Assembly (NCBI GenBank): GCA_002269645.1
Contig: NIVC01002983.1
Span: 6,687 to 70,686 of the forward strand
DNA length: 64,000 nucleotides
DNA from: Macrostomum lignano
Taxonomy: Eukaryota
Direction of reading: 5' to 3'
Below the pieces are notes generated by a model. It had not been told where the DNA came from, did not search any database, and worked only from the letters and a program-made list of their open reading frames with translations. Below are positions 4,423 to 57,289 of the stretch, piece after piece. Numbering within the stretch: the stretch's first letter is position 1; every line of letters starts with the position of its first letter. A program made the translations under genes and the position numbers.

Positions 4423-4477
<55 letters not shown>

Positions 4478-4514: not shown

Positions 4515-4567
<53 letters not shown>

Positions 4568-4580
4568 GTCTGTCTGTCTT
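4094..4580. repeat. (CTGT)n/(GT) microsatellite, ZNRF intron 1
   Basis: Direct. Confidence 0.97.
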
Positions 4581-4674
4581 AGTGTGTCTGTATATTGATA
4601 GTTGCTTGAAATGTGTGCAGTTGCAAAAAGAATCTCAAACAAGTATCTTGAATTGGTAACTCGCTGCTCAACAG

Positions 4675-5019: not shown

Positions 5020-5174
5020 GTGAGGCTGAGTTTCCATTATCGGATTAATAATGGGCTTGCCAGCTTTTAATCCATATGAATTCTAGGATTTGGAATATAT
5101 GGATTAAAGGCTACTAGTTGTTGGGGATTAAAAGATCAAATATTGGGAATCGGGGTAATTTAGAGAGATTAGGG

Positions 5175-13981: not shown

Positions 13982-14017
<36 letters not shown>

Positions 14018-14878
14018 GATCGCCCTCGCCCAAACTGTCGCCGTACAACCTCAGCCCTCGCAGTCTCTCTCCGGCCCACCACCGCGGTCACAGCGGCGGC
14101 GGCGGCGGCGGCGGCGCTCCTTTGTCGCCCTTCGGCGGAAATTCCTCTGTCGGTGGTGGAGGCGCCGGCGGGTTCTGTCTGCCTCGGACCAGCTTGGAGA
14201 CGCTGGGCTCGCTGCCGCGGATCACCATCAGTCCACACGTGCCAGAAGCTGAGGAAGAAAACAAAGGTGATGAAGCTACCACTGAGCAGCAGCTTCAGCC
14301 CTACAGATTGGACGGCGTCCGCAGCGAGCTGGCGAGTCCCGTCGGGCTGCTGTCGGATCCGAGTCACTCCAAGTCCGACACGTCGCTCGTGTCGATGCGT
14401 TTCTCCGTCGGAGAAACGGCGGCCGGCGGGACAGCCGACGGCAACGCGGCGAAATTAACCGGCGCTCCATACGCAACAAGTAGCTCCTCCATGACCCGCT
14501 CCTGGTCCTCCATGGAGGATCTGAGCGGCCATGCATCATCGGCTGTCCGCAGTCAGCCGCACCGACGACCCGTCGATGCCGGGACGATGGCTGGAGAAGC
14601 TTCCAGCTCGGCAGCAACGCTGCTGACAATTCCTCAGGACGTTGCCTCGGCCGCCGCCGCCGCCGCCGCCAGCGCTGCAGCCGAGGGTTCACCCGACAAC
14701 GCCGACAACCTGTACCCGACCTCGCGATCGCGCAGCATCCTCCGAGCTCAGACTGTTGACGACGCCGATTCCGAGTTCGTCAGTCGACGACCGCAGCGCG
14801 CTTCCCTAGTCGATTTTGTCACCTGGCCGCATTTCATCCCGGATACGGTCAACCCGCAGGTCGGGGGCACTTTTCAAG
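12895..14878 (+). CDS. FMN/capu: Cappuccino/FMN formin exon 1 (long disordered N-terminus MGQKQPR..., ends in start of DEP-like domain)
   Basis: GC-rich open frame of about 660 codons. Donor CAAG|GTAGGG at 14879 (phase 1) joins exon 22754 to give TFQGQSLLSWL. Confidence 0.7.
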
Positions 14879-15462
14879 GTAGGGGACTCTTGGCGAGATT
14901 TTTGAAGAACAACAACTCTAAATGATCTTAGAACCGACCTTGATTCGAAATTTCATTTCAATCGACTCAATTTTACTCGCAGTGTGTGTGCTATTACACA
15001 TTTTTTCTTTCCTAATTTCGTCTACCCCCCACCCCCTCCCCCCTATAATGCTTCTCGAGCAGCTCAGCCTGCTTCAACTCTTGAGTGCCAGAGTACCATA
15101 GTGGGGATGATTGCAAGCCTTGGATGAGAGTGTGTGGGGGAGAAGAGGATGAAGGCGTGGGATTGGGAGTTGCAATTCGGGCATTTCTATGGGTTGTGGA
15201 ATGGGCAGAGCAACTGCTCAGTGCGAGCACAGTAAGTATTTTGCGCTGGCAATCTCTCGCTTCTCTCTCTGCCTCTCTCTGGGATCGGCAATCTCTGTGC
15301 AACTCGTTACAGCATGTTTGCACACAAGTTGTTCAGCCCAGTGCCATCGCCTGGGTCTGATCGATCTTCTTGCTGCCTATCGGGCGCGTTGGAGCTGAAG
15401 CAATTTCCCTTAGTAGCAACTGTTTGAGAGCTATAGGGACTGCGGTGTCTGCCTGCCTGTCT

Positions 15463-23570: not shown

Positions 23571-23990
23571 CACTTCTATATTTAATAAAACTATTTGGAT
23601 ATGCCAAAATATCAAACCAAAAACAACAAACAAGTACAAAATATGTTCGAATGATTCAACTGCCTAAATTGGAAAGCAATTTTGCTTTTGCGTAAGCAGC
23701 ATTATTTCTGCACTGCGATATCAAATGCAGCAGTGAATTTATTTGAATTAACAAAAGTTATTAATAGACAAATCTGGTAGTTTATGTACAAGAGACCTTT
23801 ATAGAATTTAATAAATCATAGCATTTTGCTATTATTGTCCGCTATTGTCAAGTAAAATCATGCAGCTGGCAGCTGTTCATACCAGTAGCCATTGACAATG
23901 AACTGCAGCCTGTCCCAATGCCCCGAATTCTGCCTTTCCGACCGAATCTCCATCACTGTGCTGTATCCCGAATCGCCTTCGACGTTGCAG

Positions 23991-24716
23991 CCGCACGAGT
24001 TCTACGAATGGTGCGGCCAGCAGGCTCCTCCGCCAGCAACGCAGCCGACGTCTCAGCAGCAGCAGCAGCACAACTTGTCGCCTTCAAGGCGTCAGCAACG
24101 ACAGCTTCAACAGCAACCGACAGTTGGCGAGTCCGCGGAAGACGCTGTCTCTGCCGCCCTCGCCCAGGCGAAGCGAGACTTTGACGACAGAATCCACCGG
24201 CTGCAGCTGGAGCACAAGGAGGAGCTGGAGCGGCAACGGCAAGACGCTGATTTAAGAATCTTCCAAGCTAAAAATGAAAGCGTCATGAAGGTCTGCAGTC
24301 TGCGCGACAAAATCGAACAGCTCGAGCAGCGGGTTGAGAAGTATCGGATTCTCGCTGGAATCGAGGGCTTGCTCAGCGGTCAGGATGTTGCTGCGGTGGC
24401 GACGGCTTCCGCTGCCGCTGAAAAAAGCGGCTCTAGCAAGACTTTACCGACCGCTGCTGCTCAGGGCCCAGCGATTGGCTCTGATTCCGCTTCCGCAGCT
24501 GATGGTACCGCAGCTCCTCCAGTCGCGCCAGCCAGCTTTGACAAGTCGGTGGACACCAGCGATATTCAGCAGGTGCTGGGCGAACTCAGCAGCAGCAGTC
24601 CCGAGTCGCGCAGCCCGTTGGCAAGCGCCTCCGACTGCGCACCGATGACGGTCGACGCTTCAGCGCAGACGGACGTCTCCGGATTCGCGGCACCGCCTCC
24701 GCCGCCTCCGCCGCCG

Positions 24717-24751
<35 letters not shown>

Positions 24752-25381
24752 CCCTCCACCACCACCGCCCCCGCCGCCTCCGCCACCGCGACCAAGCAGC
24801 CTCAGTGGCGGCGCCGCCAAGTCTGCCAGCAACCAGCAGCAGCCGGGCTCCCAGGTGAGCGTCAAGGAGCAGATCATGCACTGGCAGGAGCAGTCAGTGG
24901 AGCCGCATCGCCGGGCCTGTCTCAACCTCAAGACGCTCTACTGGTCGCCGATCTACTTGAACCGGCTGCCGCCTGGCAAAGCCGGAGTCTGGGAGTCTGT
25001 CGACAGGATGGCGCTGCCAAACTCGCGCGATCTTGAGCGCCTGTTCGCCAGGCCGAGTGGCGAGTTGAGCAAGGCGGGTCGAGCCGCCAGCGCGGCCGGC
25101 AACTTGGACAGCCCGCTGAGTGCAAGCGCCGAGGGGAAGCCGTCCGGCTCTCCCGCCAAGCTGTTGAACTCGAAACGGGCTCAGAATTTAGGCATTTTTA
25201 TTGCTGCAACCCAGATAGACAAGGACGCTCTGTACAGCTGTTTGGTGGCCTTTGAACCTGGCTGCATCTCCGTGGAGCAGCTCAAACAGCTGCGCGATCT
25301 CACGCCAAGTCAGGAGGAGATGGCTCAGATTAAAGAGTTCGTGGCCTCAAATCCTGGAGCAGTTTTGGATCGGCCTGAGCG
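23991..25381 (+). CDS. FMN/capu: Formin exon 3 (DEP end, coiled coil, FH1 poly-Pro, FH2 N-part)
   Basis: ttgcag|PHEFYEW...; coiled coil AKRDFDDRIHRLQLEHKEELE; run of over 30 Pro near 24690-24790; LKTLYWSPI...LERLF and KLLNSKRAQNLGIFI FH2 motifs; donor CG|GTGAGT. Confidence 0.93.
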
Positions 25382-25464
25382 GTGAGTCTGTGCAGGTTGA
25401 CTGCATCAAATTACTGCTGGTAGATAACCCAACTCTCACCAAGCTCTGTGTAATCGGTGAGCAT

Positions 25465-26135
25465 GTCTCTCTCACCCAGCTCTGTGCATTCGGTGAGCAT
25501 GTACTCTCACCCAGCCCTGTCATTTAGTGAGCATCTACTCTCACCTAGCCCTGTCCTTTAGTGAGCATCTACTCTCACCTAGATCTGTCCTTTAGTGAGC
25601 ATCTACTCTCACCTAGATCTGTCCTTTAGTGAGCATCTACTCTCACCTAGATCTGTCCTTTAGTGAGCATCTACTCTCACCTAGATCTGTCCTTCAGTGA
25701 GCATCTACTCTCACCTAGCCCTGTCCTTTAGTGAGCATCTACTCTCACCTAGATCTGTCCTTTAGTGAGCATCTACTCTCACCTAGCCCTGTCTTTTAGT
25801 GAGCATCTACTCTCACCTAGATCTGTCCTTTAGTAAGCATCTACTCTCACCTAGATCTGTCCTTTAGTGAGCATCTACTCTCACCTAGATCTGTCCTTTA
25901 GTGAGCATCTACTCTCACCTAGATCTGTCCTTCAGTGAGCATCTACTCTCACCTAGATCTGTCCTTTAGTGAGCATCTACTCTCACCTAGATCTGTCTTT
26001 TAGTGAGCATCTACTCTCACCTAGATCTGTCCTTTAGTGAGCATCTACTCTCACCTAGATCTGTCCTTTAGTGAGCATCTACTCTCACCTAGATCTGTCC
26101 TTTAGTGAGCATTTACTCTTACCTATATCTGTAAC
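25465..26135. repeat. 34-bp minisatellite (GTGAGCATCTACTCTCACCTAGATCTGTCCTTTA)n
   Basis: Direct, formin intron 3. Confidence 0.95.
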
Positions 26136-26184
26136 TTTGGTGAGAGTCTCAGCTACTCTCAGCCTTTTAAATGATAGATTATAT

Positions 26185-26280
26185 TAGATTAGATTAGATT
26201 AGATTAGATTGGATTAGATTAGATTAGATTAGATTAGATTAGATTAGATTAGATTCGATTAGATTCGATTAGAATAGATT
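26185..26280. repeat. (ATTAG)n pentamer
   Basis: Direct. Confidence 0.9.
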
Positions 26281-26404
26281 GGATAAAATTGGATATGTCA
26301 GACTACTTAAGCTACTGCATTACGCTGTGAGTAGTCAGCATCGACATAGCTGCAGTAACCAACAGTTGTCAACTTAGACACACACGCAATGCCCCTCGGC
26401 ACAG

Positions 26405-26678
26405 ATTTCTGCTATCAATTTCGGAGATTCCGTTCTTCTCGGAGCGTCTGCACTGCATGCTGTTCCAATTGGAGCACGAGGACTGCGTCTCAGCGCTGGA
26501 GTCTCGCGTCACCGCGCTCATCTCGGTCTGCCGTCAGCTGTACGAGAGTCGATCGGTGCGAAAAGTGCTCAGCCTGGTGCTGGCGCTGGGCAACCTGCTC
26601 AACTATGGTACCAGCAGAGGGCGCGCTGATGGATTCGGTCTGGAGATTCTGGGCAAGCTGAAGGATTTGAGATCCTCG
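26405..26678 (+). CDS. FMN/capu: Formin exon 4 (FH2)
   Basis: FLLSISEIPFFSERLHCMLFQ...VLSLVLALGNLLNYGTSRGRADGFGLEILGKLKDLRSS, the FH2 GN..N.G and GF.L..L.KL motifs typical of the FMN subfamily. Confidence 0.95.
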
Positions 26679-26727
26679 GTTAGTTGATGAGGCTTATGCA
26701 TTTTAATACTGATGTAGCCATGTAACC

Positions 26728-27510
26728 TGTCTTAGGTGCTTACCTGCCTGTCTTAGGTGCTTACCTGCCTGTCTTAGGTGCTTACCTGCCTGTCTTACAT
26801 GTAGGTGCTTACCTGCCTGTCTTAGGTGCTTACCTGCCTGTCTTAGGTGCTTACCTGCCTGTCTTAGGTGCTTACCTGCCTGTCTTACATGTAGGTGCTT
26901 ACCTGCCTGTCTTAGGTGCTTACCTGCCTGTCTTAGGTGCTTACCTGCCTGTCTTAGGTGCTTACCTGCCTGTCTTACATGTAGGTGCTTACCTGCCTGT
27001 CTTAGGTGCTTACCTGCCTGTCTTAGGTGCTTACCTGCCTGTCTTAGGTGCTTACCTGCCTGTCTCAGGTGCTTACCTTAAGTTACCTGCCTGTTTAATT
27101 TATAGGTGCTTACCTGCCTGTTTTATTGGTGATTACCTGCCTGTTTTATTGGTGCTTACCTGCCTGTTTTATTGGTGCTTACCTGCCTGTTTTATAAGTG
27201 CTTACCTGCCTGTTTATTGGTGCTTACCTGCCTGTTTTATTGGTGCTTACCTGCCTGTTTATTGGTGCTTACCTGCCTGTTTATTGGTGCTTACCTGCCT
27301 ATCTTAGGTGCTTACCTTAAGTTACCTGCCTGTTTATTGGTGCTTACCTGCCTATCTTAGGTGCTTACCTTAAGTTACCTGCCTGTTTAATTTATAGGTG
27401 TTTACCTGCCTGTTTTATTGGTGCTTACCTGCCTGTTTTATTGGTGCTTACCTGCCTGTTTTATTGGTGCTTACCTGCCTGTTTCATTGGTGCTTACCTG
27501 CCTGTTTTAG
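26728..27510. repeat. 21/22-bp minisatellite (TCTTAGGTGCTTACCTGCCTG)n
   Basis: Direct, formin intron 4. Confidence 0.95.
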
Positions 27511-27871
27511 GTAAATGAGACAAAATGGGAAAACAGGGGTAAAAGAATAGGGAGTGGATATTGGATTGCTTGTGTGTAATTGTATCAAGTTACAGTTATT
27601 GCCTGAATAAAGCACTAGATATATTTTCATAATATTCTAAACTATGATGAGTATTGCTTAATCTGTCTCAGGCTGAGCATACTTGCGTTTCTCAAAGCTA
27701 CTTCAAGGTAAAGTATTATATTAGTTATGCCCAGTTCATTTGTTACATTAAAGTTCGACTGCTGTTGAAGTTTAAAGTTTAAAAAAACTTTGCTGACTAA
27801 ATCTTGCACTGTTTCTTGAAGTTTTACTTCAAAAACAAAACAGAACTCATCAAAAATGAATTTCATCTCAG

Positions 27872-28154
27872 GAGAACACCTGCACGCTATTCCAAGTGCT
27901 GGTTAGCATGTACATCGACGAGTACTGGGAGAGCGGCAGCCCCGAGCTGGGCACCGTAGTGCCGTTCCCTCTGCCCGACCCGGAAGAGGTCAAGCAAGCG
28001 GCTGAAGTGGACCTGGCCGGCGTGAAAGGCGAACTGCGGCACCTGTCGGCCAGGCTGATTGCCAACGAGAAGATCGTGAGAAAGGTGGCCACCTCGTCTG
28101 CGCCTAGCGAGCGGGAACCGTTTGCTAAGAAGATGAACTCATTTCTGGATAGAG
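27872..28154 (+). CDS. FMN/capu: Formin exon 5 (FH2)
   Basis: ENTCTLFQVLVSMYIDEY...PFPLPDPEEVKQAAEVD...EPFAKKMNSFLDR. The FPLPxP motif is characteristic of FMN/Capu. Phases are consistent. Confidence 0.93.
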
Positions 28155-28619
28155 GTGAGCTGAGGTCAGCAATGCTTGTAATAAGTAAATGTTGGATGCA
28201 GTAGTTTGTTTGTTTGTTCTGGGGAACCGTTCGCAAGTTTGGTTCGAGTGTGACATCCAGAGTAAATATTAGATAACAAACACTCAGGACTTGCTTGCAC
28301 CGTCGACACCGAATGAGCCATTGAATTTCATATGAATCCGATGTACAATCACGCAAAAATTGGCTTGGTTTGCATGCCGCCAGCTCTGTAGTAGGCCATC
28401 GTACTGGATTTGGAATGAAGACGTTAGTGCATCATCAAAGAAGCCGCCGGTTGTGTCATCGGTGTAAAAGCAGTTCAGGGAATCGAATATTCGAGCACTT
28501 GTACCAACGATTAACCATTTTTGTTGCACACACCTGCCAATTCAACAACAACATGTGCTGTCTAGGTCTTTACAAAGGTACATGTAGAGTCACCGGGCGC
28601 GCCTCTGGTCCGATCGAAT

Positions 28620-29125
28620 TCTGGACGCTGGCGTCAGCCAGCAGGCAGTTGACGAAACATCGAGTGCACGCCTGCCCCCTCCGGTAGGGTTGCCAGCAGC
28701 GTCAGCAGCAGAACCTTATGCACCGGCTGTGACCAGTGCGAGTTCATGGCGAATGATGTGGCCTCCCAGCTGGAGTCGGCGTAAAAGGTCGCTTGGACGG
28801 GCCAAGGGCGTTGCGGCGTTGATGAAATGGAAACTCTGCTCGTCGCCTGTGTTGAAGGCGTCGCAATTATGCAGTCCTTCCCACCGCCGAAGCTCAAGGC
28901 GATAATTTGATCTAGTCAAATGACTAGCGAGTAGTCAACCAGGCATGCCCATCCGCTGACCCCTGAGTACGCAAACGCGCTCAGACAGGATGTACAGTCC
29001 TGACGTAGTTCGATTCCGTTCTCTGCGACGTCTATCTAGAGCCGTGAGAGTCTCGACCATTGCGACCGAACCTCCAAGAAGCAGATCGTGTACATTCTTG
29101 ACGATTAGACAATGCATGTCTGTGT
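28620..29125 (-). mobile_element. Decayed RTE-clade LINE 3' fragment (copy 1)
   Basis: Frameshifted LARPSDLLRRLQLGGHIIRHE and PVHKVLLLTL, typical of the post-RT region of RTE-like LINEs. Homologous to 32110-32560. Confidence 0.65.
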
Positions 29126-29259
29126 GGTTGCTAACAGACAAGCACAGACATACTGCATCGATACTGCATCGATTCTAACGCGTCTTCATCATACCTTCTC
29201 TATACATTAGAAAATGGCCCCATGGTTCGTTTACTTTTCAATTTTCATTTTTCCTACAG

Positions 29260-29453
29260 CCAAAAAAGATTTAAGCGAATTTCGCGAAACAGTTACGGAC
29301 GCCGAGACTTGCTACTGCAACATTCTCATGTACTTCTGCCAGCCGCCATCCACACCGCCAAAGGAGTTTTTCAGCCACTGGGCAGCGTTTTGTGTCGATT
29401 TTAAAGAGCAGCTTAGGCGACAAGTTAATCTGCGGCAGCGAGGGGTCACGTGA
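29260..29453 (+). CDS. FMN/capu: Formin exon 6 (FH2 end); stops at 29453 or splices at 29450
   Basis: ttcctacag|(A)KKDLSEFRETVTDAETCYCNILMYF...PKEFFSHWAAFCVDFKEQL. The TGA overlaps a GTGAGT donor. Confidence 0.88.
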
Positions 29454-38151: not shown

Positions 38152-38409
38152 ATGGCCAGTCCAGAAGAGGACACTGGTCGCAATAGAGATTCGCTCTCGC
38201 CTCAATTTGATGATGTCAATGATGATGACGAAAATGACAGTAATGATAGCTACAGTTCGGATGCAGATGAAGATGATGCTGGGCAGCTTGGTGGACAGGA
38301 GTTGGATCCAGCTGTCTGGTGCTTGTTGGATAGGGTTGGACGGAGGCACTGGCTTAACAGCGATGGACTGCTGCTGATTGGTCGGGAGGATTGCAGCCTC
38401 ATGCTTAAG
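38152..38409 (+). CDS. CEP170: CEP170-like exon 1 (acidic extension plus FHA start)
   Basis: WCLLDRVGRRHWLNSDGLLLIGREDCSLMLK resembles the CEP170 N-terminus (WFLVSSGGTRHRL...VGRDDCELML). Donor at 38410. Confidence 0.85.
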
Positions 38410-38976: not shown

Positions 38977-39066
38977 TCGCACAGCGTGGACCCTCAGCAC
39001 GCTGTGATGACATACGACTCCGAGCTCAGACTGTATCGCGTCAAAGACCTCGACACTGTTAACGGG
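38977..39066 (+). CDS. CEP170: CEP170-like exon 2 (FHA)
   Basis: SHSVDPQHAVMTYDSELRLYRVKDLDTVNG|GTAAGC carries the FHA S..H and NG motifs. Confidence 0.93.
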
Positions 39067-40188: not shown

Positions 40189-40267
40189 CTATGCATACTT
40201 CTCAGGTTCTATAGATACTCGTGCATAGGCGTACAATGATACAGAACCGTTATATTTTCATTGCCAG

Positions 40268-40582
40268 ACATTTGTCAACGAGAGCAGAATAGCCGAGGAC
40301 ACCTATGTTTACCTTAACAATGGCGATTCGCTTCGGTTTGGTTACGATTCTAACGTGTTTCGAGTGCAAAGATTTTCCCCAACTACCGCCGCTGCCACAA
40401 CGTCTTCTGCGGCCTCCTCAACGCCTCCTTCAGCTGCTCCGTCTGCTTCAGTGCCCGCGACCGCCGCCTCTGCCCTGAAAAAGTCCGAGCATCCGCCTGT
40501 TGTGTCTCGACCGTCTCTCAGTGGCTTGCCCGAATGGGCTACTGGCGCCGCTAAGGGTGTCTCAGCTATGGCCGAGTGTCCG
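40268..40582 (+). CDS. CEP170: CEP170-like exon 3 (FHA end plus linker)
   Basis: TFVNESRIAEDTYVYLNNGDSLRFGYDSNVFRV. Ends ECP|GTGAGT at 40583, the first of 85 tandem donors. Confidence 0.88.
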
Positions 40583-43500
40583 GTGAGTTGTGTCTTCTTA
40601 GTGTCTAATATTGGGGTGGAGTGTCTGGTGAGTTGTGTCTTCTTAGTGTCTAATATTGGGGTGGAGTGTCCGGTGAGTTGTGTCTTCTTAGTGTCTAATA
40701 TTGGGGTGGAGTGTCTGGTGAGTTGTGTCTTCTTAGTGTCTAATATTGGGGTGGAGTGTCCGGTGAGTTGTGTCTTCTTAGTGTCTAATATTGGGGTGGA
40801 GTGTCTGGTGAGTTGTGTCTTCTTAGTGTCTAATATTGGGGTGGAGTGTCTGGTGAGTTGTGTCTTCTTAGTGTCTAATATTGGGGTGGAGTGTCCGGTG
40901 AGTTGTGTCTTCTTAGTGTCTAATATTGGGGTGGAGTGTCTGGTGAGTTGTGTATTCTTAGTGTCTAATATTGGGGTGGAGTGTCTGGTGAGTTGTGTCT
41001 TCTTAGTGTCTAATATTGGGGTGGAGTGTCTGGTGAGTTGTGTCTTCTTAGTGTCTAATATTGGGGTGGAGTGTCCGGTGAGTTGTGTCTTCTTAGTGTC
41101 TAATATTGGGGTGGAGTGTCCGGTGAGTTGTGTCTTCTTAGTGTCTAATATTGGGGTGGAGTGTCCGGTGAGTTGTGTCTTCTTAGTGTCTAATATTGGG
41201 GTGGAGTGTCCGGTGAGTTGTGTCTTCTTAGTGTCTAATATTGGGGTGGAGTGTCCGGTGAGTTGTGTCTTCTTAGTGTCTAATATTGGGGTGGAGTGTC
41301 CGGTGAGTTGTGTCTTCTTAGTGTCTAATATTGGGGTGGAGTGTCCGGTGAGTTGTGTCTTCTTAGTGTCTAATATTGGGGTGGAGTGTCTGGTGAGTTG
41401 TGTCTTCTTAGTGTCTAATATTGGGGTGGAGTGTCCGGTGAGTTGTGTCTTCTTAGTGTCTAATATTGGGGTGGAGTGTCTGGTGAGTTGTGTCTTCTTA
41501 GTGTCTAATATTGGGGTGGAGTGTCTGGTGAGTTGTGTCTTCTTAGTGTCTAATATTGGGGTGGAGTGTCCGGTGAGTTGTGTATTCTTAGTGTCTAATA
41601 TTGGGGTGGAGTGTCTGGTGAGTTGTGTCTTCTTAGTGTCTAATATTGGGGTGGAGTGTCCGGTGAGTTGTGTCTTCTTAGTGTCTAATATTGGGGTGGA
41701 GTGTCTGGTGAGTTGTGTCTTCTTAGTGTCTAATATTGGGGTGGAGTGTCTGGTGAGTTGTGTCTTCTTAGTGTCTAATATTGGGGTGGAGTGTCCGGTG
41801 AGTTGTGTATTCTTAGTGTCTAATATTGGGGTGGAGTGTCTGGTGAGTTGTGTCTTCTTAGTGTCTAATATTGGGGTGGAGTGTCCGGTGAGTTGTGTCT
41901 TCTTAGTGTCTAATATTGGGGTGGAGTGTCCGGTGAGTTGTGTCTTCTTAGTGTCTAATATTGGGGTGGAGTGTCCGGTGAGTTGTGTCTTCTTAGTGTC
42001 TAATATTGGGGTGGAGTGTCCGGTGAGTTGTGTCTTCTTAGTGTCTAATATTGGGGTGGAGTGTCCGGTGAGTTGTGTATTCTTAGTGTCTAATATTGGG
42101 GTGGAGTGTCTGGTGAGTTGTGTCTTCTTAGTGTCTAATATTGGGGTGGAGTGTCCGGTGAGTTGTGTCTTCTTAGTGTCTAATATTGGGGTGGAGTGTC
42201 TGGTGAGTTGTGTCTTCTTAGTGTCTAATATTGGGGTGGAGTGTCTGGTGAGTTGTGTCTTCTTAGTGTCTAATATTGGGGTGGAGTGTCCGGTGAGTTG
42301 TGTCTTCTTAGTGTCTAATATTGGGGTGGAGTGTCTGGTGAGTTGTGTCTTCTTAGTGTCTAATATTGGGGTGGAGTGTCCGGTGAGTTGTGTCTTCTTA
42401 GTGTCTAATATTGGGGTGGAGTGTCTGGTGAGTTGTGTCTTCTTAGTGTCTAATATTGGGGTGGAGTGTCCGGTGAGTTGTGTCTTCTTAGTGTCTAATA
42501 TTGGGGTGGAGTGTCTGGTGAGTTGTGTCTTCTTAGTGTCTAATATTGGGGTGGAGTGTCCGGTGAGTTGTGTCTTCTTAGTGTCTAATATTGGGGTGGA
42601 GTGTCCGGTGAGTTGTGTATTCTTAGTGTCTAATATTGGGGTGGAGTGTCCGGTGAGTTGTGTCTTCTTAGTGTCTAATATTGGGGTGGAGTGTCTGGTG
42701 AGTTGTGTCTTCTTAGTGTCTAATATTGGGGTGGAGTGTCCGGTGAGTTGTGTCTTCTTAGTGTCTAATATTGGGGTGGAGTGTATGGTGAGTTGTGTCT
42801 TCTTAGTGTCTAATATTGGGGTGGAGTGTCCGGTGAGTTGTGTCTTCTTAGTGTCTAATATTGGGGTGGAGTGTCTGGTGAGTTGTGTCTTCTTAGTGTC
42901 TAATATTGGGGTGGAGTGTCCGGTGGGTTGTGTCTTCTTAGTGTCTAATATTGGGGTGGAGTGTCCGGTGAGTTGTGTCTTCTTAGTGTCTAATATTGGG
43001 GTGGAGTGTCCGGTGAGTTGTGTCTTCTTAGTGTCTAATATTGGGGTGGAGTGTCTGGTGAGTTGTGTCTTCTTAGTGTCTAATATTGGGGTGGAGTGTC
43101 TGGTGAGTTGTGTATTCTTAGTGTCTAATATTGGGGTGGAGTGTCTGGTGAGTTGTGTCTTCTTAGTGTCTAATATTGGGGTGGAGTGTCTGGTGAGTTG
43201 TGTCTTCTTAGTGTCTAATATTGGGGTGGAGTGTCTGGTGAGTTGTGTCTTCTTAGTGTCTAATATTGGGGTGGAGTGTCTGGTGAGTTGTGTCTTCTTA
43301 GTGTCTAATATTGGGGTGGAGTGTCTGGTGAGTTGTGTCTTCTTAGTGTCTAATATTGGGGTGGAGTGTCTGGTGAGTTGTGTCTTCTTAGTGTCTAATA
43401 TTGGGGTTGTGTGTCCGGTGAGTTGTGTCTTCTTAGTGTCTAATATTGGGGTGGAGTGTCTGGTGAGTTGTGTCTTCTTAGTGTCTAATATTGGGGTGGA

Positions 43501-44370
43501 GTGTCCGGTGAGTTGTGTATTCTTAGTGTCTAATATTGGGGTGGAGTGTCTGGTGAGTTGTGTCTTCTTAGTGTCTAATATTGGGGTGGAGTGTCCGGTG
43601 AGTTGTGTCTTCTTAGTGTCTAATATTGGGGTGGAGTGTCCGGTGAGTTGTGTCTTCTTAGTGTCTAATATTGGGGTGGAGTGTCTGGTGAGTTGTGTCT
43701 TCTTAGTGTCTAATATTGGGGTGGAGTGTCTGGTGAGTTGTGTCTTCTTAGTGTCTAATATTGGGGTGGAGTGTCTGGTGAGTTGTGTCTTCTTAGTGTC
43801 TAATATTGGGGTGGAGTGTCTGGTGAGTTGTGTCTTCTTAGTGTCTAATATTGGGGTGGAGTGTCTGGTGAGTTGTGTATTCTTAGTGTCTAATATTGGG
43901 GTGGAGTGTCCGGTGAGTTGTGTATTCTTAGTGTCTAATATTGGGGTGGAGTGTCTGGTGAGTTGTGTCTTCTTAGTGTCTAATATTGGGGTGGAGTGTC
44001 CGGTGAGTTGTGTCTTCTTAGTGTCTAATATTGGGGTGGAGTGTCTGGTGAGTTGTGTCTTCTTAGTGTCTAATATTGGGGTGGAGTGTCCGGTGAGTTG
44101 TGTCTTCTTAGTGTCTAATATTGGGGTGGAGTGTCCGGTGAGTTGTGTCTTCTTAGTGTCTAATATTGGGGTGGAGTGTCCGGTGAGTTGTGTCTTCTTA
44201 GTGTCTAATATTGGGGTGGAGTGTCTGGTGAGTTGTGTCTTCTTAGTGTCTAATATTGGGGTGGAGTGTCCGGTGAGTTGTGTCTTCTTAGTGTCTAACA
44301 TTGGGGTTGTGTGTCCGGTGAGTTGTGTCTTCTTAGTGTCTAACATTGGGGTTGTGTGTCCGGTGAGTTT
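40574..44370. repeat. 45-bp minisatellite (GAGTGTCyGGTGAGTTGTGTCTTCTTAGTGTCTAATATTGGGGTG)n containing the exon 3 donor
   Basis: Exact 45-bp phase. GT donors run from 40583 to 44363 (84 x 45). Confidence 0.98.
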
Positions 44371-45109
44371 GTGTCTTTTTAGTGCGTAATATTAGGCGTG
44401 TCCATGTTTCGATATGCATGCAGTTTTAAGAACAATGGACTTTAATTAACATTGCTTTAATCAGTCAGTCAGTAAAGCAGAAAAAATAGCAGAATGCTTT
44501 CTCCATGCTGCTGTATTTGAAATTGTAGCGAATAGCGAAACCGTAGAGTTCTTGGTTGCATTGAGTCTATAGAAGAGAGCGGAAAGTGACTGCAATGCTA
44601 ATTGGTGTTGCATTACCAAAAGTCTCAGTTCACCTTACTAAGCCTAGCTAATGCAATGCTAAGTTACCATAGCAGTGGTTGAACAAACGACTTTCTTAAA
44701 GTAAGTCAGTTTTATGTAAGGCAGTACACAGACCGCTTTTGCGTATTATTAAATGTCTGCAGAAATGCAGTGTAGCGTAACTTATAACAACAGGAGTGTT
44801 AGAAAATGGTGAATTCGCTTAGTAATATCTGTAATAATATCAATATTAGTTCAACATGAATAGTTTTGTGTAAGTTAGTAAAACAGAATTAGATAAGCAA
44901 CAAGGATTCTAGCGGGTTTTTTTAGCGCTGATGCGTTTTGTATAGGGCTGATCGGTAAACTTTTCTGGTAATTTGTTCGAAGTTTTAAATTAGGGTAAGA
45001 GAGGGAGAAAGAGGGAAAGGAGAAACAGGCTGACAGAACAGAATGGAAGACCTTCGGAAATACACATCCAGAATATACTCGTATTTAGACCAAGAGATAA
45101 GCACTCTAG

Positions 45110-45495
<386 letters not shown>

Positions 45496-45612
45496 CAATA
45501 CTGATTTCCACAACAAATTTAGAAACTTGTGCACTAATTCTACTACTGCAAGTAAAACTGCAGCAAAGCGCAGGCAATTTTACCAGTTAAACTACAATAA
45601 ACATTCACCCAG

Positions 45613-45961
45613 GCCTGCACTCAGGGCAGCGAAGAATTTCGCCGGTCAAGCGCAGACCTGAGCAGACTGTGCCTGTTTCATCAGAAGGAGCTGGATCGCG
45701 TCTCCACCGCAGCTAGCATGCCCTCGCCTGGTCAACAATCGGCGGCACCAGCAACAGCAGCGACCTCTAGCAAACCGGCTGTAACCGCCTCAGTGACCGC
45801 TTCTGTAGCTGGAATGCAGGATCCCGGCTTCTCAAAAGATTCGCTCAATTTCAACTCTAACAATACTACTCAAAATAGTAATACTAGTAAGGATGGCGCC
45901 AAGGAAGCTAGTTGCAGCAAAAATAACTTTTCTAGAGGCGTTGAACGAAAGAAGATTAAAG
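45613..45961 (+). CDS. CEP170: CEP170-like exon 4
   Basis: ttcacccag|ACTQGSEEFRRSS...KKIK then G|GTAAGA. Phase 0 in, phase 1 out, matching both neighbours. Confidence 0.72.
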
Positions 45962-47460: not shown

Positions 47461-47554
47461 GATATTTTATTTTTGGCAGCTACATTTTAATGCCTTCCAT
47501 TATTGAAAATCTAATAAAAAATAGCTATGAAAAACTCAACTTGGCGACTCCCAG

Positions 47555-48549
47555 AACTCTACGGCCAGCCCGACTGGTGGGGCACCGACGACGCCGATGA
47601 AGAACGAGAGCAGCAATCTGCGAAACAGAAAAAGCAGCAGCCGCCGCCGCCCCCGCCGCCCCCGCAACCAGCGTCGCCGCCTCGACGCATGCCGAATCGT
47701 CACGCCGAAGCGTTCACGGTGGCTCTGGACCCGTCGGCCGAAGACCCGACATCATCAACCGAGTGTGTCGCTGGCGACGGCGGCGGCGGAGGCACCGGTT
47801 TCGTCGCCGGCAGTGGCGTGGGCGGCGGCAGCGGCGACGGCCTACAAGTGACGGACAGTCTCAGCCGGTTTGTGCCGTCAAAAATTCGTAAAAGCTTCCA
47901 GGAGAGGCAGGAAATGAAACGGAAGAAAGTTGAAGAACTGCGCGAGCGGACGCGGCAGCAGCAGCAGCAGCAGGTGCCGCCGTCGGCGTCTGTTGCTAAG
48001 CGACCAATCGCCGCCTCTAGACAGTCGTCGGCCCCCCTGGCGCCTGGCGCCGTTACTAAACCAACTTCCGGTGGCGCCTCGGCGCCATCTAGAAATGCTC
48101 GAAGCGTCAGCGGAACCGGAAGCGGCGGAAAAGCTTTATTGTTTGATCGCCTGTTAAATAGCAACAGTAGGGTTGGCGGAGGTGGCGGCGCCGGCGCTGC
48201 TACGGATCGGCGCCGAACTAGCGCCAAATCTGGCGCCGCTAGTTCAACCGGTGGCGGCGGCGCCGCAAGTCGGATTAGTATTCGAGATAAGCCATTGCCG
48301 CCGCCTCCGCCGCCGTCTAAAAAGCAGCAAAAACAGAAGCCACAGCAGCAGCAGCAGCAGCAGCACCCACTATCCGAGCAAGACCTCTACTCAGAAGCTG
48401 CTCAATACGAAGATGAGCAACCAGACGAGGATAATGAGGATGCTGCGAGCGAGACTGGCACCTACACAATATCTGAGAGCGGCAGCGCGCACGAGGACGC
48501 TGAGTTCAGGCATCTGGAGGCTCTGGCTGACAGTCTCGACGCGGGACAG
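47555..48549 (+). CDS. CEP170: CEP170-like exon 5
   Basis: LYGQPDWWG and SETGTYTI are conserved CEP170-family motifs. ctcccag acceptor, CAG|GTGCGA donor. Confidence 0.88.
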
Positions 48550-52860: not shown

Positions 52861-53056
52861 AATCTGCCATGATTTCACACTTGTGGCCATTAATTCTCAC
52901 TGATTTCACGCAAAGATTAGGAGCGGTGGATAGTCACGTGATGAGATTGTACATGTAGTAAATGTACATTTATATGCTTCCACAGAGCAACTGTGGAAGC
53001 ATATGTATAAACAATAGTCTATCAATATCAAAGCACATGAATTTTATTATTCACAG

Positions 53057-53893
53057 GAACTGGAATTGAGGGCCGGGCCCAAATGGGTAACCGATATGGT
53101 CAGCGTGAACGGCGCTGCCGGAGTCGATGCGGCCGCTTCAACTGCGGCAACAACAACAGCAGCAGCGCCAAAGCCAGCGTCCCCGGTTGTTGCATTGAGG
53201 CGAGACAGCGAGGCATCTGACGACACGTGTCATCAGTCTCAGGTGTCGGACGTGCTGTCGTCTGGGCCTATTGATGAAGAGCGCAATAATAAACAGCAAC
53301 TGTTAGACGAGCAGCAACGTTCAGCATCCTTGGATACGGCCTGCCTACTGCAGGACACGGCCACTGTTCTTCATCACATGGAGGCCCGCCTAGCAACCAG
53401 AGCCGGGGGACCAGAGCCAGAAAACGACATCAGCAATGCCGCACTGTCGGATCAGGCAGCTTTGCCAACATCGCACAGTCTCCGTTCTCGTCTGTCCGCT
53501 TTGCGGGTGGCAAAGTCTCAGCAGCAGCAGCAGAAATCCACTGCTAGCAGTCGCCAGGCTTTCGAATACGGCCGGCACTCGTTGAAGATGCCAGCCTCCA
53601 GTACGCATCCGCCTCCGGTGTCGAGGAATGCGGTCACCGCTGCCGCCGCCACGGCGACCTCCGCCACGATTTCAACGCCGCACAGAATTCTGTCGGCGGG
53701 CTCGCCGTCCGCCTGGCGCGGCGGTCGTCGGCCGGAAAGTCTGCACGAAGCTCTGGCGACGTCGGCGGCGGCCGCGGGACGTCCGAGTTTGCGCGGCTCT
53801 GCGGAGGACGTTCGAGCCAGTCGGGATGCTCGCCACCGGGGCGGCGGCGGCACGGATCTCAGTCGGGATTTGGAGCGGCTGGCTAGGAGAGAG
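53057..53893 (+). CDS. CEP170: CEP170-like exon 6
   Basis: ttcacag|ELELRAGPKWVTDM...TDLSRDLERLARRE|GT resembles the CEP170 PKWV and SQDLALIARE segments. Confidence 0.8.
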
Positions 53894-54044
53894 GTTGGCG
53901 CTCTTGTTATACCCCGAGGCTGCTAATTAGTAGTATGTAGTGTATGTTGATGTATTGATACTACAGATTATTACATATGGCTTTTGTTATCATTTTTACA
54001 CCTGCCCTAATGGGCAGATGTGCAACCGACAGCTCAATGACAGC

Positions 54045-55862
54045 TCAATCAATCATGATTCAATCACACACCGCCATCAACCACTCATCAATCACACACT
54101 TAGCCATCAATCACTCATCAATCACACACTTAGCCAACAATCACTCATCAATCACACACTTAGCCATCAATCATGATTCAATCACACACTGAGCCATCAA
54201 TCACTCATCAATCACACACTTAGCCATCAATCATGATTCAATCACACACTGAGCCATCAATCACTCATCAATCACACACTGAGCCATCAATCACACACTT
54301 AGCCATCAATCATGATTCAATCACACACTGAGCCATCAATCACTCATCAATCACACACTTAGCCATCAACCACTCATCAATCACACACTTAGCCATCAAT
54401 CACTCATCAATCACACACTTAGCCATCAATCATGATTCAATCACACACTGAGCCATCAATCACTCATCAATCACACACTGAGCCATCAATCACTCATCAA
54501 TCACACACTTAGCCATCAATCATGATTCAATCACACACTGAGCCATCAATCACTCATCAATCACACACTTAGCCATCAATCACTCATCAATCACACACTG
54601 AGCCATCAATCACTCATCAATCACACACTTAGCCATCAATCATGATTCAATCACACACTTAGCCATCAATCACTCATCAATCACAAACTGAGCCATCAAT
54701 CACTCATCAATCACACACTTAGCCATCAATCATGATTCAATCACACACTGAGCCATCAATCACTCATCAATCACACACTTAGCCATCAATCATAATTCAA
54801 TCACACACTGAGCCATCAATCACACACTGAGCCATCAATCACACACTGAGCCATCAATCACACACTGAGCCATCAATCACTCATCAATCACACACTTAGC
54901 CATCAATCACACACTGAGCCATCAATCACACACTTAGCCATCAACCACTCATCAATCACACACTTAGCCATCAATCACTCATCAATCACACACTTAGCCA
55001 TCAATCATGATTCAATCACACACTGAGCCATCAATCACTCATCAATCACACACTGAGCCATCAATCACTCATCAATCACACACTTAGCCATCAATCACAC
55101 ACTGAGCCATCAATCACTCATCAATCACACACTTAGCCATCAATCATGATTCAATCACACACTGAGCCATCAATCACTCATCAATCACACACTTAGCCAT
55201 CAATCACTCATCAATCACACACTGAGCCATCAATCACTCATCAATCACACACTTAGCCATCAATCATGATTCAATCACACACTTAGCCATCAATCACACA
55301 CTTAGCCATCAATCACACACTGAGCCATCAATCACTCATCAATCACACACTTAGCCATCAATCACACACTGAGCCATCAATCACACACTTAGCCATCAAC
55401 CACTCATCAATCACACACTTAGCCATCAATCACTCATCAATCACACACTTAGCCATCAATCATGATTCAATCACACACTGAGCCATCAATCACTCATCAA
55501 TCACACACTTAGCCATCAATCACACACTGAGTCATCAATCACTCATCAATCACACACTTAGCCAACAATCACTCATCAATCACACACTTAGCCATCAATC
55601 ACACACTGAGTCACCAATCACTCATCAATCACACACTGAGTCATCAATCACTCATCAATCACACACTTAGCCAACAATCACTCATCAATCACACACTTGG
55701 CCATCAATCACACACTGAGTCATCAATCACTCATCAATCACACACTTAGCCAACAATCACTCATCAATCACACACTTAGCCATCAATCACACACTGAGCC
55801 ATCAATCACACACTTAGATGTAATAATCTGTAGTATCATCAATCATAATTCAATCACACACT
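54045..55862 (+). repeat. Composite 19/11-bp satellite (ATCAATCACACACTkAGCC / ATCAATCACTC), forward arm
   Basis: Direct, CEP170 intron 6. Confidence 0.95.
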
Positions 55863-55883
55863 GTTGAAGTTAATCAATCAGTA

Positions 55884-56612
55884 TGTGATTGAATCATGAT
55901 TGATGGCTAAGTGTGTGATTGATGAGTGATTGATGGCTCAGTGTGTGATTGATGGCTAAGTGTGTGATTGATGAGTGATTGATGGCTCAGTGTGTGATTG
56001 ATGGCTAAGTGTGTGATTGATGAGTGGTTGATGGCTAAGTGTGTGATTGATGGCTCAGTGTGTGATTGATGGCTAAGTGTGTGATTGATGAGTGATTGAT
56101 GGCTCAGTGTGTGATTGATGGCTAAGTGTGTGATTGATGAGTGATTGATGGCTCAGTGTGTGATTGATGGCTAAGTGTGTGATTGATGAGTGATTGATGG
56201 CTAAGTGTGTGATTGATGAGTGATTGATGGCTCAGTGTGTGATTGAATCATGATTGATGGCTAAGTGTGTGATTGATGAGTGATTGATGGCTCAGTGTGT
56301 GATTGATGGCTAAGTGTGTGATTGATGAGTGATTGATGGCTCAGTGTGTGATTGATGAGTGATTGATGGCTCAGTGTGTGATTGATGAGTGATTGATGGC
56401 TCAGTGTGTGATTGAATCATGATTGATGGCTAAGTGTGTGATTGATGAGTGATTGATGGCTAAGTGTGTGATTGATGAGTGGTTGATGGCTAAGTGTGTG
56501 ATTGATGGCTCAGTGTGTGATTGATGGCTAAGTGTGTGATTGATGAGTGATTGATGGCTCAGTGTGTGATTGATGGCTAAGTGTGTGATTGATGACTAAT
56601 TGATGGCTCAGT
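55884..56612 (-). repeat. Same satellite in inverted orientation
   Basis: GATGGCTmAGTGTGTGATTGATGAGTGATT is the reverse complement of the forward-arm unit. Confidence 0.95.
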
Positions 56613-56702
56613 GATTGGTTACTTTTCCTGTCTCAGAGGCTGAAGTGCGAGCTAACCATTCGTCATCCGCATCCAAGCCGGTCCCCATTCCTCTCCAAAC
56701 AG

Positions 56703-57171
56703 GATCTGAGTGGATTAGGCGCTGCCGCCGGTCGCCAATCGTCTGCTTTCTCGCCGACCACCTCCAACAACAACAGCAGCAGGGCGCCATCCTCCTCCGT
56801 GGTTGTGGTCGGAGGTGGCGGCGACGGCGGCACCTGCGACTGCGCTTGCCACCATGAAGCGGGCAGGCAGCAGCAGCTCAGGCGCGAGGTGGCGGCCTAC
56901 GACTCTGTGCTGCTGTCCAGCCTGGTCAGAATGAGCTGCAAACTGCGTCGCTGCTCTGACGGCCTTCTTGGCCGGCTCCGGAGCAGCCGGCATTTGAGTC
57001 GGACTCCGAGTCCGGCTGAGGACGTCCTGTTGAACAGCCCCGATGCTGCCGGAGCATCCTTAGCGGCTGCCGCGGCTCCGGGGGCGTCGGCTGAAGGACG
57101 GAGCAGCGACTTGCAGGACAATCTGCAGTCGTGTCTGTACAATTTGCAGGCTGTGCAGTATCATATTCAGA
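56703..57171 (+). CDS. CEP170: CEP170-like exon 7 (C-terminal domain); alternative in-frame acceptor at 56637
   Basis: YDSVLLSSLVRMSCKLRRCSDGLLGRLR and NLQSCLYNLQAVQYHIQ resemble the CEP170 C-terminal helices. Donor A|GTGAGC at 57172. Confidence 0.8.
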
Positions 57172-57289
57172 GTGAGCGGCAGAAGAGTTAGCCAATGAAA
57201 ATTGCTTTCTAGATGAGAATCGCCCAGAAACAGAAGTTACTGTACACTAAAATATTGCACCTAATAAATAGTTGCACTAATTAATAATC

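What the first reader, a model, noticed from the sequence alone, without database searches (positions are those of the whole stretch)
40574..44370. An exon end plus 5' splice site amplified 85 times, in frame and stop-free, in the CEP170-like gene
Seen: the 45-bp unit begins inside exon 3 (GAG TGT CCG|GTGAGT), so the real donor is repeated at 40583+45n up to 44363. All copies match the true donor from about -9 through the intronic side apart from a C/T variant at -2 and rare point changes (e.g. GTGGGT at 42923). The unit is 15 codons with no stop in the CEP170 frame (ECP/LVSCVFLVSNIGV). Each unit also has a pyrimidine tract + TAG (TCTTCTTAG) and a CTAAT branch-like motif about 39 nt before the next unit's AG. 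Established: U1 reads roughly -3..+6, so these donors look equivalent to it. Inference: either something enforces use of the first donor, or donor choice yields a ladder of in-frame isoforms with 0-84 hydrophobic Cys-rich 15-mers just after the FHA domain, or the 5-kb intron is removed stepwise. Copy-number alleles would then tune the isoform range.
Basis: partly seen in the sequence, partly recalled or inferred. Interest (0 to 1): 0.88.

Follow-up and report, generated by a model that had tools for sequence, protein, structure and literature searches.

The report
Splice donor repeated 85 times
A 45-bp minisatellite in a flatworm (Macrostomum lignano) CEP170-like gene starts 9 bases inside an exon and so copies that exon's splice donor 84 more times into the intron; the sequence is real, but this layout is already known from human genes such as F7, where only the first donor is normally used.

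Summary
A perfectly phased 45-bp array (40574 to about 44403, 85 units) begins 9 nt inside the third coding exon of a CEP170-like gene. It places 85 strong donors (CCG/CTG|GTGAGT) at 40583+45n, all in phase 0 and with no stop in the gene's frame.

The open frame is close to what chance gives, and the unit scores as non-coding by codon usage. There is no AG|GT ratchet site for recursive splicing.

The window is from Macrostomum lignano and is 39% tandem arrays. Introns 1-4 of this gene are 71-91% array, and arrays elsewhere stop 23-115 bp from exons. This is the one array that crossed a boundary.

The class is already described. Minisatellites whose first monomer spans an exon-intron junction occur in human F7, IFI6, CBS, LMNB2 and PDGFA (PMC1557585). 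In those genes only the most upstream donor is used, or at most the first three.

Most likely the first donor (40583) is joined to 45613 and the other 84 are silent pseudo-sites removed with the intron. No transcript data could be reached, so donor usage is inferred. This is a new, unusually large, non-vertebrate member of a known kind, of modest interest.

The parts
40268..40582 (+). Third coding exon of the CEP170-like gene (end of the FHA domain plus a low-complexity tail). Its last 9 nt, GAGTGTCCG, are the start of repeat unit 1.
   Evidence: Spliced ORF model. FHA Pfam hit at E=6e-14. 38-47% identity to a vertebrate-type CEP170 N-terminus.
40580..40588 (+). Authentic (most upstream) 5' splice site, CCG|GTGAGT, with cleavage between 40582 and 40583.
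   Evidence: Among the 33 GT dinucleotides between 40268 and 40640, only this one and the second-unit donor at 40628 have 6 or more Watson-Crick pairs to U1 in register, and this is the first after acceptor 40268. U1 duplex energy is -9.4 kcal/mol. Phase 0, and in frame with exon 4.
40574..44403 (+). 45-bp minisatellite of 85 units plus a 6-8 nt partial unit, consensus GAGTGTCCGGTGAGTTGTGTCTTCTTAGTGTCTAATATTGGGGTG. It is GT-rich (GC skew +0.56).
40625..44368 (+). 84 reiterated pseudo-donors at 40628+45n (n=0..83), all phase 0. They read C[C/T]G|GTGAGT, with one GTGGGT (GT at 42923) and one ATG|GTGAGT (unit starting at 42779).
44404..45110 (+). Unique part of intron 3.
   Evidence: No homology to the repeat unit. 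Sequence shown.
45111..45497 (+). (AGAC)n microsatellite in the 3' part of intron 3, compositionally complementary to the GU-rich 45-nt array.
   Evidence: Duplex energy -51 kcal/mol against -35 +/- 7 for shuffled units.
45613..45961 (+). Next coding exon. The acceptor is cacccag|GCC, and an in-frame alternative AG lies 12 nt downstream (exon start at 45625).
38152..38409 (+). First coding exon (ATG to AAG|gtgact).
38977..39066 (+). Second coding exon (core of the FHA domain).
47525..48549 (+). Fifth coding exon, carrying the CEP170 motif LYGQPDWWG.

Best explanation
This is an ordinary intronic minisatellite. It arose by tandem duplication of a 45-bp segment that happened to straddle the exon 3 / intron 3 boundary of the Macrostomum lignano CEP170-like gene, and it then expanded to about 85 copies. 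The genome around it has introns that are mostly made of such arrays. As a by-product, the authentic donor is followed by 84 donors of equal strength.

The most upstream donor (40583) is the one spliced to the acceptor at 45613. It is the first strong U1 site after the exon's acceptor, consistent with exon definition or the 5'-to-3' 'oriented scanning' shown for human F7. The 84 downstream copies are silent pseudo-sites that leave with the 5-kb intron. A trace of use of the second or third donor (+15 or +30 aa, in frame) is possible.

Shown here: the array, its register with the exon, the equality of the donors, the non-coding character of the unit, and the array-saturated genomic context. Inferred: which donor is actually used.
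For: Structure of the array.

Gene model and first strong donor.

Donor strength: U1 duplex energy is equal for all copies, and as strong as or stronger than the gene's other donors (-6.6 to -9.5 kcal/mol).

Genomic context: the window is 39.1% tandem arrays. Introns 1-4 are 71-91% array. Arrays end 30-115 bp from the other exon edges examined and 23 bp from acceptor 56637, so one array overlapping an edge by 9 bp is not surprising.

Organism: two exon translations are 100% identical over 94 and 64 residues to a UniProt M. lignano FH2 protein. Simple and tandem repeats are reported as 15% of that genome (PMC5730564).

Non-coding character of the unit: log-likelihood ratio -4.1 bits, in the bottom 2.4% of exon windows. 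The open frame is near chance.

Precedent: the same architecture occurs in F7, LMNB2 and PDGFA, where only the first donor is used, and in IFI6 and CBS, where the first three are used. Mutagenesis in F7 showed the pseudo-sites are functional but lose to the most upstream site (PMC1557585).
Against: No transcript evidence could be obtained. The three protein-database searches found no M. lignano product of this gene.

All precedents are mammalian, with arrays of about 1.5 kb or less. This array is 3.8 kb and sits in a flatworm that also does SL trans-splicing.

Classic in-vitro work on duplicated strong 5' splice sites (Eperon and colleagues; recalled from my own knowledge, not checked here) favours the site nearest the 3' splice site, which would predict use of the last donor.

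Predicted local RNA accessibility does not favour the first donor: 0.0007 against 0.02-0.07 for internal donors.

The in-unit acceptor-like TAG is as pyrimidine-rich as the gene's real acceptors.
Confidence: 0.7

Rival explanations
1. Limited ladder. Besides the first donor, the next one or two donors are used at appreciable levels (more than 10%). This would give CEP170-like isoforms with +15 or +30 residues just after the FHA region, as in human IFI6 and CBS.
For: [quoted passage not shown] Here donors 2 and 3 are as strong as donor 1, in phase 0 and stop-free, so such mRNAs would escape nonsense-mediated decay.
Against: F7, LMNB2 and PDGFA use only the first site. The inserted peptide is hydrophobic, Cys-rich and non-coding-like. 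There are no transcript data.
Confidence: 0.2
2. Broad ladder or downstream-donor use. Many of the 85 donors, or the last ones nearest the acceptor, are used. Exon 3 is then really up to 4.1 kb long and encodes up to 84 copies of a 15-residue repeat, with copy number tuning the protein.
For: All donors are equivalent to U1, in frame and stop-free. The proximity rule for strong duplicated 5' splice sites in vitro points this way (my own knowledge). Internal donors are predicted to be more accessible than the first.
Against: The unit's codon usage lies in the bottom 2.4% of exon windows. The main variant is Pro to Leu in 41 of 84 units. The minus strand also has an open frame, and every 3n-period array in the window has open frames. 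No known junction-spanning minisatellite uses sites beyond the third. The vertebrate-type CEP170 N-terminus compared here has no such repeat.
Confidence: 0.04
3. Stepwise or nested removal. The array is spliced out piecemeal using the TCTTCTTAG acceptor-like site and CTAAT branch-like motif present in each unit.
For: Each unit has a pyrimidine-rich TAG (pyrimidine fraction 0.59, against 0.24-0.76 for the real acceptors). A CTAAT lies 38 nt upstream of the next unit's AG (read from the sequence).
Against: There is no AGGT in the array, so no donor is regenerated and no ratchet point exists. The AG lies 19 nt after the donor of its own unit, inside the region U1 would cover. The resulting 'exons' would be 26 nt long, and each retained piece shifts the frame (26 mod 3 = 2). 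Exons that short are poorly defined (my own knowledge).
Confidence: 0.04
4. Assembly artefact. The array, or its length, is produced by mis-assembly of a repeat-rich genome.
For: M. lignano is reported as hard to assemble because of simple repeats, and the sequenced DV1 line carries duplicated chromosomes.
Against: The variant pattern along the array is irregular (C/T string with only weak lag-2 correlation of 0.34). The 3' edge units are diverged, as in natural arrays. Similar arrays fill the whole window. At most the copy number is uncertain.
Confidence: 0.03

Closest known systems
Human F7 intron 7 VNTR (37 bp, 5-9 copies; Borensztajn et al. 2006, PMC1557585)
   Same: The first monomer spans the exon-intron boundary, so the authentic donor is followed by pseudo-donors of identical sequence. 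The unit size is similar.
   Different: The array here has 85 copies over 3.8 kb rather than 5-9 copies. The donor is stronger (CCG|GTGAGT against UGG|gugggu). Here every pseudo-site is in frame, because 45 is a multiple of 3. The organism is a flatworm, and donor usage has not been measured.
Human IFI6 (6-16) minisatellite: authentic donor plus 25 pseudo-sites, giving multiple splice donors (Turri et al. 1995, as summarised in PMC1557585); also the CBS intron 13 VNTR
   Same: A junction-spanning minisatellite.
   Different: Usage there stops at the third site. The units are shorter (my own knowledge, not checked here: IFI6 12 nt, CBS 31 bp). Here any usage of extra donors is unknown.
Human LMNB2 (100 bp x 10-15) and PDGFA intron 4 (81 bp x 16-18) junction-reiterating repeats (cited in PMC1557585)
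   Same: Kilobase-scale arrays that cover most of an intron and reiterate the exon/intron junction. Only the authentic donor is used.
   Different: They have fewer copies and longer units, and they are vertebrate genes.
Recursive splicing at ratchet points (Drosophila Ubx and long vertebrate genes; my own knowledge)
   Same: A long intron with many internal splice-site-like motifs.
   Different: Recursive splicing needs a juxtaposed AG|GT that regenerates a donor. The array contains no AGGT.
(GT)n-(AC)m bridged introns of teleosts (Lin et al. 2016, PMC4691745)
   Same: A GU-rich repeat lies at the 5' end of the intron and an AC-rich repeat, (AGAC)n, near its 3' end. Predicted pairing is somewhat better than for shuffled sequence.
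   Different: The repeats here are a 45-nt minisatellite and a tetranucleotide repeat, not complementary dinucleotides. The signal is weak (z about -2.2) and was not tested further.

Membership tests
Junction-spanning minisatellite with reiterated splice donor (F7 / IFI6 / CBS / LMNB2 / PDGFA type) | A head-to-tail array of a 10-100 bp unit inside an intron | tested here: met
   45 bp x 84.9 copies, 97% match, 0% indels; units in register.
Junction-spanning minisatellite with reiterated splice donor (F7 / IFI6 / CBS / LMNB2 / PDGFA type) | The first monomer contains the exon-intron boundary | tested here: met
   Unit 1 is the last 9 nt of the exon followed by GTGAGT.... There is no unit homology further into the exon. 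The boundary itself is inferred from the gene model, not from cDNA.
Junction-spanning minisatellite with reiterated splice donor (F7 / IFI6 / CBS / LMNB2 / PDGFA type) | The downstream pseudo-donors are identical, or nearly so, to the authentic donor | tested here: met
   43 of 85 are identical over -3..+6; the rest differ at -2 (41 units) or by single changes. U1 duplex energy is -9.2 to -9.4 kcal/mol.
Junction-spanning minisatellite with reiterated splice donor (F7 / IFI6 / CBS / LMNB2 / PDGFA type) | Only the most upstream donor, or the first few, is used in vivo | not testable with these tools
   No M. lignano transcript or protein of this gene was found in the searchable collections.
Junction-spanning minisatellite with reiterated splice donor (F7 / IFI6 / CBS / LMNB2 / PDGFA type) | Copy-number polymorphism (VNTR behaviour) | not testable with these tools
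   Only one haplotype (the window) is available.
Recursive-splicing intron | An internal AG|GT ratchet site that regenerates a 5' splice site | tested here: not met
   There are no AGGT in 40574-44403.
Protein-coding tandem repeat (the array as part of a long exon) | Codon usage and composition like the gene's exons | tested here: not met
   The log-likelihood ratio is -4.1 bits per 15 codons, against an exon mean of +12.1 (bottom 2.4%). GC is 0.47 against 0.61 for exons.
Protein-coding tandem repeat (the array as part of a long exon) | An open frame preserved beyond chance | tested here: not met
   P(stop-free) is 0.40-0.47. Only 5 of 135 substitutions create a stop and only 7 variant types are seen. 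Zero-indel arrays with periods not divisible by 3 are common in the window.
CEP170 family (host gene) | An N-terminal FHA domain | tested here: met
   PF00498 at E=6e-14; 38% identity over 168 aa to a vertebrate-type CEP170 N-terminus.
CEP170 family (host gene) | The LYGQPxWWG motif downstream of the FHA domain | tested here: met
   Exon 5 LPELYGQPDWWGTDDAD aligns to PLYGQPSWWGEDDAN.
CEP170 family (host gene) | The CEP170 C-terminal domain | tested here: inconclusive
   The downstream ORFs 53018-53923 and 56604-57188 gave no Pfam hit. The gene probably runs beyond the window.

The most novel reading that the evidence does not exclude
In M. lignano the 85 equivalent, in-frame donors are really sampled. 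Either many of them are used, or the ones nearest the acceptor are. Array copy number would then set a ladder of CEP170-like isoforms carrying variable numbers of a hydrophobic Cys-rich 15-mer after the FHA domain. That outcome would contradict the 'most upstream site wins' rule derived from mammalian genes.
Probability: 0.05. Interest if true: 0.7.

Novelty: new member of a known kind. Interest (0 to 1): 0.3.

Why it matters
This is a natural competition experiment. Eighty-five donors of equal strength are spread over 3.8 kb, all in frame, in an animal where transgenesis is available (PMC5730564). With 85 copies, against at most 26 in the human examples listed in PMC1557585, it would be the largest example among those of a junction-spanning minisatellite, and the only non-vertebrate one.

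It could test whether the mammalian rule that the first donor wins (oriented scanning or exon definition) also holds in a flatworm and over kilobase distances. It also shows that M. lignano introns tolerate arrays right up to, and in this case across, splice signals.

It does not by itself point to a new mechanism. For annotation it is a warning: ORF-based or ab initio gene callers will read the 1386-codon stop-free stretch 40229-44386 as coding.

Tried and rejected
1. Direct transcript evidence. Three protein-collection searches were run with the spliced N-terminus, a cleaned junction-centred query and the neighbouring FH2 gene. No M. lignano product of the CEP170-like gene was found. The only relative was a vertebrate-type CEP170 from a Logan contig. 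Donor usage therefore could not be read.

2. Rfam scan of the window: no hits.

3. RNA structure as the reason for first-donor preference. The local unpaired probability is lower for the first donor (0.0007) than for internal donors (0.02-0.07), so this was rejected as an explanation.

4. Deeper exon homology. The 60 nt upstream of 40574 and the 80 nt downstream of 44398 show no similarity to the unit beyond chance. The array therefore really starts at about -9.

5. A second junction-spanning array. The 34-bp array at 25457-26144 carries GTGAGC in each unit and sits 75 bp after the formin donor at 25383. Its degenerate edge reaches only to about 25432 and has no similarity to the junction. This was rejected.

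6. General enrichment of donor motifs in the window's arrays. By eye, about 3 of about 25 array consensus units contain GTRAG on the + strand, close to expectation. This was not pursued.

7. Selection for an open frame: rejected.

8. Coding potential of the unit: rejected.

9. The paper by Turri et al. 1995 (PMC306954) is not held in the library. IFI6 details are therefore taken from PMC1557585.
Full report
OBSERVATION

The sequence is as described. Tandem Repeats Finder reports one array at 40574-44393 with period 45, 84.9 copies, 97% matches and no indels. Cutting the region every 45 nt from 40574 gives 85 units in perfect register. Each unit carries GGTGAGT at unit positions 9-15. The one exception is GGTGGGT, with its GT at 42923. 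Donor-like GTs therefore lie at 40583+45n for n=0..84, the last at 44363.

Thirty-three units are identical to unit 1 over all 45 nt, and 43 are identical over -3..+6. Forty-one units have T at -2 (CCG to CTG). Across units 1-84 only seven variant types exist. The last three units share edge-specific changes, and the 85th has a 1-nt insertion after its donor. A 6-8 nt partial unit (GTGTCC) follows, so the array ends near 44403. A 21-mer across the junction hits 84 times at 3 or fewer mismatches, all inside the array, with 0 expected. Of the 98 GTRAGT motifs on the + strand of the window, 84 are in this array.

HOST GENE AND ORGANISM

Stop-free stretches and splice motifs give a + strand model with five exons: 38152-38409, 38977-39066, 40268-40582, 45613-45961 and 47525-48549. 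They join in one frame. The product has an FHA domain (PF00498, E=6e-14). It aligns to a vertebrate-type CEP170 N-terminus at 38% identity over 168 residues. The CEP170 motif also aligns: LYGQPDWWGTDDAD here against LYGQPSWWGEDDAN. 'CEP170-like' is therefore justified.

Between the acceptor at 40268 and the second repeat unit there are 33 GT dinucleotides. Only 40583 and its first copy at 40628 have 6 or more Watson-Crick pairs with U1 in register. So 40583 is the first strong donor after the acceptor. The exon/intron boundary remains a model, because no cDNA was available.

The neighbouring FH2 (formin) gene identifies the organism. Two of its exon translations are 100% identical, over 94 and 64 residues, to UniProt A0A1I8I319 of Macrostomum lignano.

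CONTEXT

The window is 39.1% tandem arrays of 100 bp or more, in 29 blocks. Introns 1-4 of this gene are 84%, 71%, 83% and 91% array. Arrays elsewhere stop 30, 62, 78, 115, 79, 67 and 30 bp from the exon edges, and 23 bp from the acceptor at 56637. The 45-bp array is the only one that crosses an edge, by 9 bp.

A candidate second case was checked and rejected. This is the 34-bp array after the formin donor at 25383, where each unit contains GTGAGC. Its degenerate edge stops about 50 bp short of the donor and has no similarity to the junction.

The M. lignano genome paper reports simple and tandem repeats as 15% of the genome and an average intron length of 1.1-1.4 kb (PMC5730564). With introns this saturated by arrays, one array straddling a boundary is an expected accident rather than a designed feature.

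ARE THE DONORS EQUIVALENT?

To U1, yes. Duplex energy with the U1 5' end is -9.4 kcal/mol for the C variant, which includes the authentic site, and -9.2 for the T variant. The gene's other four donors range from -6.6 to -9.5. What distinguishes the first donor is only the sequence upstream of -9 (exon GCTATGGCC against intronic TTGGGGTG) and its position.

Local folding does not explain a first-site preference. The first donor is predicted to be less accessible (0.0007) than the internal ones (0.02-0.07). The array on its own is less structured than shuffled sequence (z=+2.2).

IS 'IN FRAME AND STOP-FREE' MEANINGFUL?

No, for six reasons:

- About a third of the window's arrays have periods divisible by 3.
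- A random or shuffled 45-mer is stop-free in one given frame with probability 0.40-0.47.
- All nine 3n-period arrays in the window have at least one open frame on each strand, and this array's minus strand is open too.
- Only 5 of the 135 possible point changes would create a stop, and only seven variant types exist. The absence of stops therefore carries no information.
- The dominant variant is non-synonymous (Pro to Leu, in 41 units).
- A codon-usage log-likelihood built from 2,562 codons of the window's exons, against unique non-coding sequence, gives the unit -4.1 bits. That lies in the bottom 2.4% of exon windows (mean +12.1) and within the non-coding distribution.

STEPWISE REMOVAL?

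The array has no AGGT, so there are no recursive ratchet points. Each unit does have an acceptor-like TCTTCTTAG. Its pyrimidine fraction is 0.59, against 0.24-0.76 for the gene's real acceptors. A CTAAT lies 38 nt before the next unit's AG. However, the AG is only 19 nt downstream of its own unit's donor. Any internal splicing would leave 26-nt pieces that shift the frame. This pathway can at most be noise.

WHAT IS KNOWN

A literature search found the exact class. Borensztajn et al. [quoted passage not shown] Their examples are:

- F7 IVS7: 37 bp, 5-9 copies. Only the most upstream site is used.
- LMNB2: 100 bp x 10-15. Only the authentic site is used.
- PDGFA intron 4: 81 bp x 16-18. Only the authentic site is used.
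- IFI6/6-16: the authentic donor plus 25 pseudo-sites. [quoted passage not shown]
- CBS intron 13: 15-20 repeats. [quoted passage not shown]

With 50 F7 constructs they showed three things. The pseudo-sites are functional. [quoted passage not shown] When upstream sites are inactivated, the next one takes over, with increasing exon skipping as the distance grows. They called this 5'-to-3' oriented scanning.

MOST LIKELY MECHANISM

By that precedent, and by exon definition (a 315-nt exon whose first strong downstream donor is 40583), the first donor is joined to 45613. The other 84 donors are removed with the intron.

The array itself is best read as a neutral or slightly deleterious product of slippage or unequal exchange. 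Its homogeneity (97%), its diverged 3' edge, and the interspersed C/T variant with weak dimer periodicity (lag-2 autocorrelation 0.34) are typical of a young, actively exchanging minisatellite. I put 0.7 on 'first donor used in at least 90% of mRNAs'.

Several points count against this. The precedents are mammalian and involve arrays of about 1.5 kb or less. In-vitro work on duplicated strong donors (my own knowledge, not checked here) favours the donor nearest the acceptor. No transcript data could be reached.

NOVELTY AND VERDICT

This is a new, very large, non-vertebrate member of a known kind. It is a neat natural substrate for testing 5' splice site choice in a transgenic-capable flatworm, but it is not evidence for a new mechanism.

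SEEN IN PASSING

- The GU-rich array at the 5' end of intron 3 and an (AGAC)n tract near its 3' end are compositionally complementary. Duplex energy is -51 kcal/mol against -35 +/- 7 for shuffled units.
- A downstream intron carries two arrays of the same unit in inverted orientation, with arms up to 442 nt at 93% complementarity.
- Both recall the (GT)n-(AC)m bridged introns of teleosts (PMC4691745). That may be a more original lead than the donor array itself.

Noticed in passing
window 54048-55814 and 55880-56613 (intron ending at acceptor 56636/56637): Two arrays of the same ~30-bp unit lie in opposite orientation within one intron of the CEP170-like gene. The inverted arms reach 442 nt at 93% complementarity. 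The second array ends 23 bp before the acceptor. In the pre-mRNA this could form a very long hairpin that brings the two splice sites together, like the bridged (GT)n-(AC)m introns of teleosts (PMC4691745).
   Followed up: partly
window 40574-44403 versus 45111-45497: The GU-rich 45-nt array at the 5' end of intron 3 and the (AGAC)n tract 115 bp upstream of its acceptor are compositionally complementary. Two units against (AGAC)n give -51 kcal/mol, against -35 +/- 7 for shuffled units (z about -2.2). The array alone is less structured than shuffled sequence (z=+2.2).
   Followed up: partly
whole window: 39.1% of the window is tandem arrays of 100 bp or more (29 blocks, periods 4-70). Introns 1-4 of the CEP170-like gene are 71-91% array. 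Arrays stop 23-115 bp from exon edges. This is well above the 15% genome-wide figure reported for M. lignano.
   Followed up: partly
window 25457-26144: A 34-bp array of about 20 copies carries a donor-like GTGAGC in each unit. It begins 75 bp downstream of the formin exon donor at 25383 (GCG|GTGAGT). It does not reach or resemble the junction.
   Followed up: yes
window 23889-29450 (+): This is an FH2 (formin) gene (Pfam FH2). The UniProt M. lignano model A0A1I8I319 matches the window exons at 100% in places but contains stretches translated in a shifted frame, e.g. SRTCSTMVPAEGALMDS. The public model therefore looks mis-spliced.
   Followed up: partly
window 40508-40540 (exon 3) and about 47545-47590 (exon 5): Exon 3 holds a degenerate copy (RPSLSGLPEW) of the CEP170 motif (LYGQPSWW), which occurs in better form in exon 5 (LPELYGQPDWWG). 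BLAST aligns both to the same vertebrate segment. This may reflect an internal duplication of that region in the flatworm gene.
   Followed up: no
window 40581+45n (unit position 8): The main array variant is C to T at a CpG (CCGG to CTGG): 44 C against 41 T, interspersed, with lag-2 autocorrelation 0.34. This could reflect recurrent CpG transitions or shuffling of a C/T dimer by unequal exchange. It was not resolved.
   Followed up: partly
window 12829-14922 (+): A 698-codon stop-free stretch, rich in Ala, Gly, Pro and Arg, with no Pfam hit. It may be a single-exon low-complexity gene or a GC-rich non-coding region.
   Followed up: no
window 4652-5020 (+), with (TCTG)n at 4093-4579: A RING-finger exon scores below the Pfam cut-offs (zf-RING_2 24.3 bits against 27.3; zf-RING_11 24.3 against 27). 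A 487-bp (TCTG)n tract lies just upstream, in what looks like the preceding intron.
   Followed up: no
window 40229-44386 (+): Because the array is stop-free in the exon's frame, the region forms a 1386-codon open stretch. ORF-based gene callers would report it as a protein, which is an annotation trap.
   Followed up: yes
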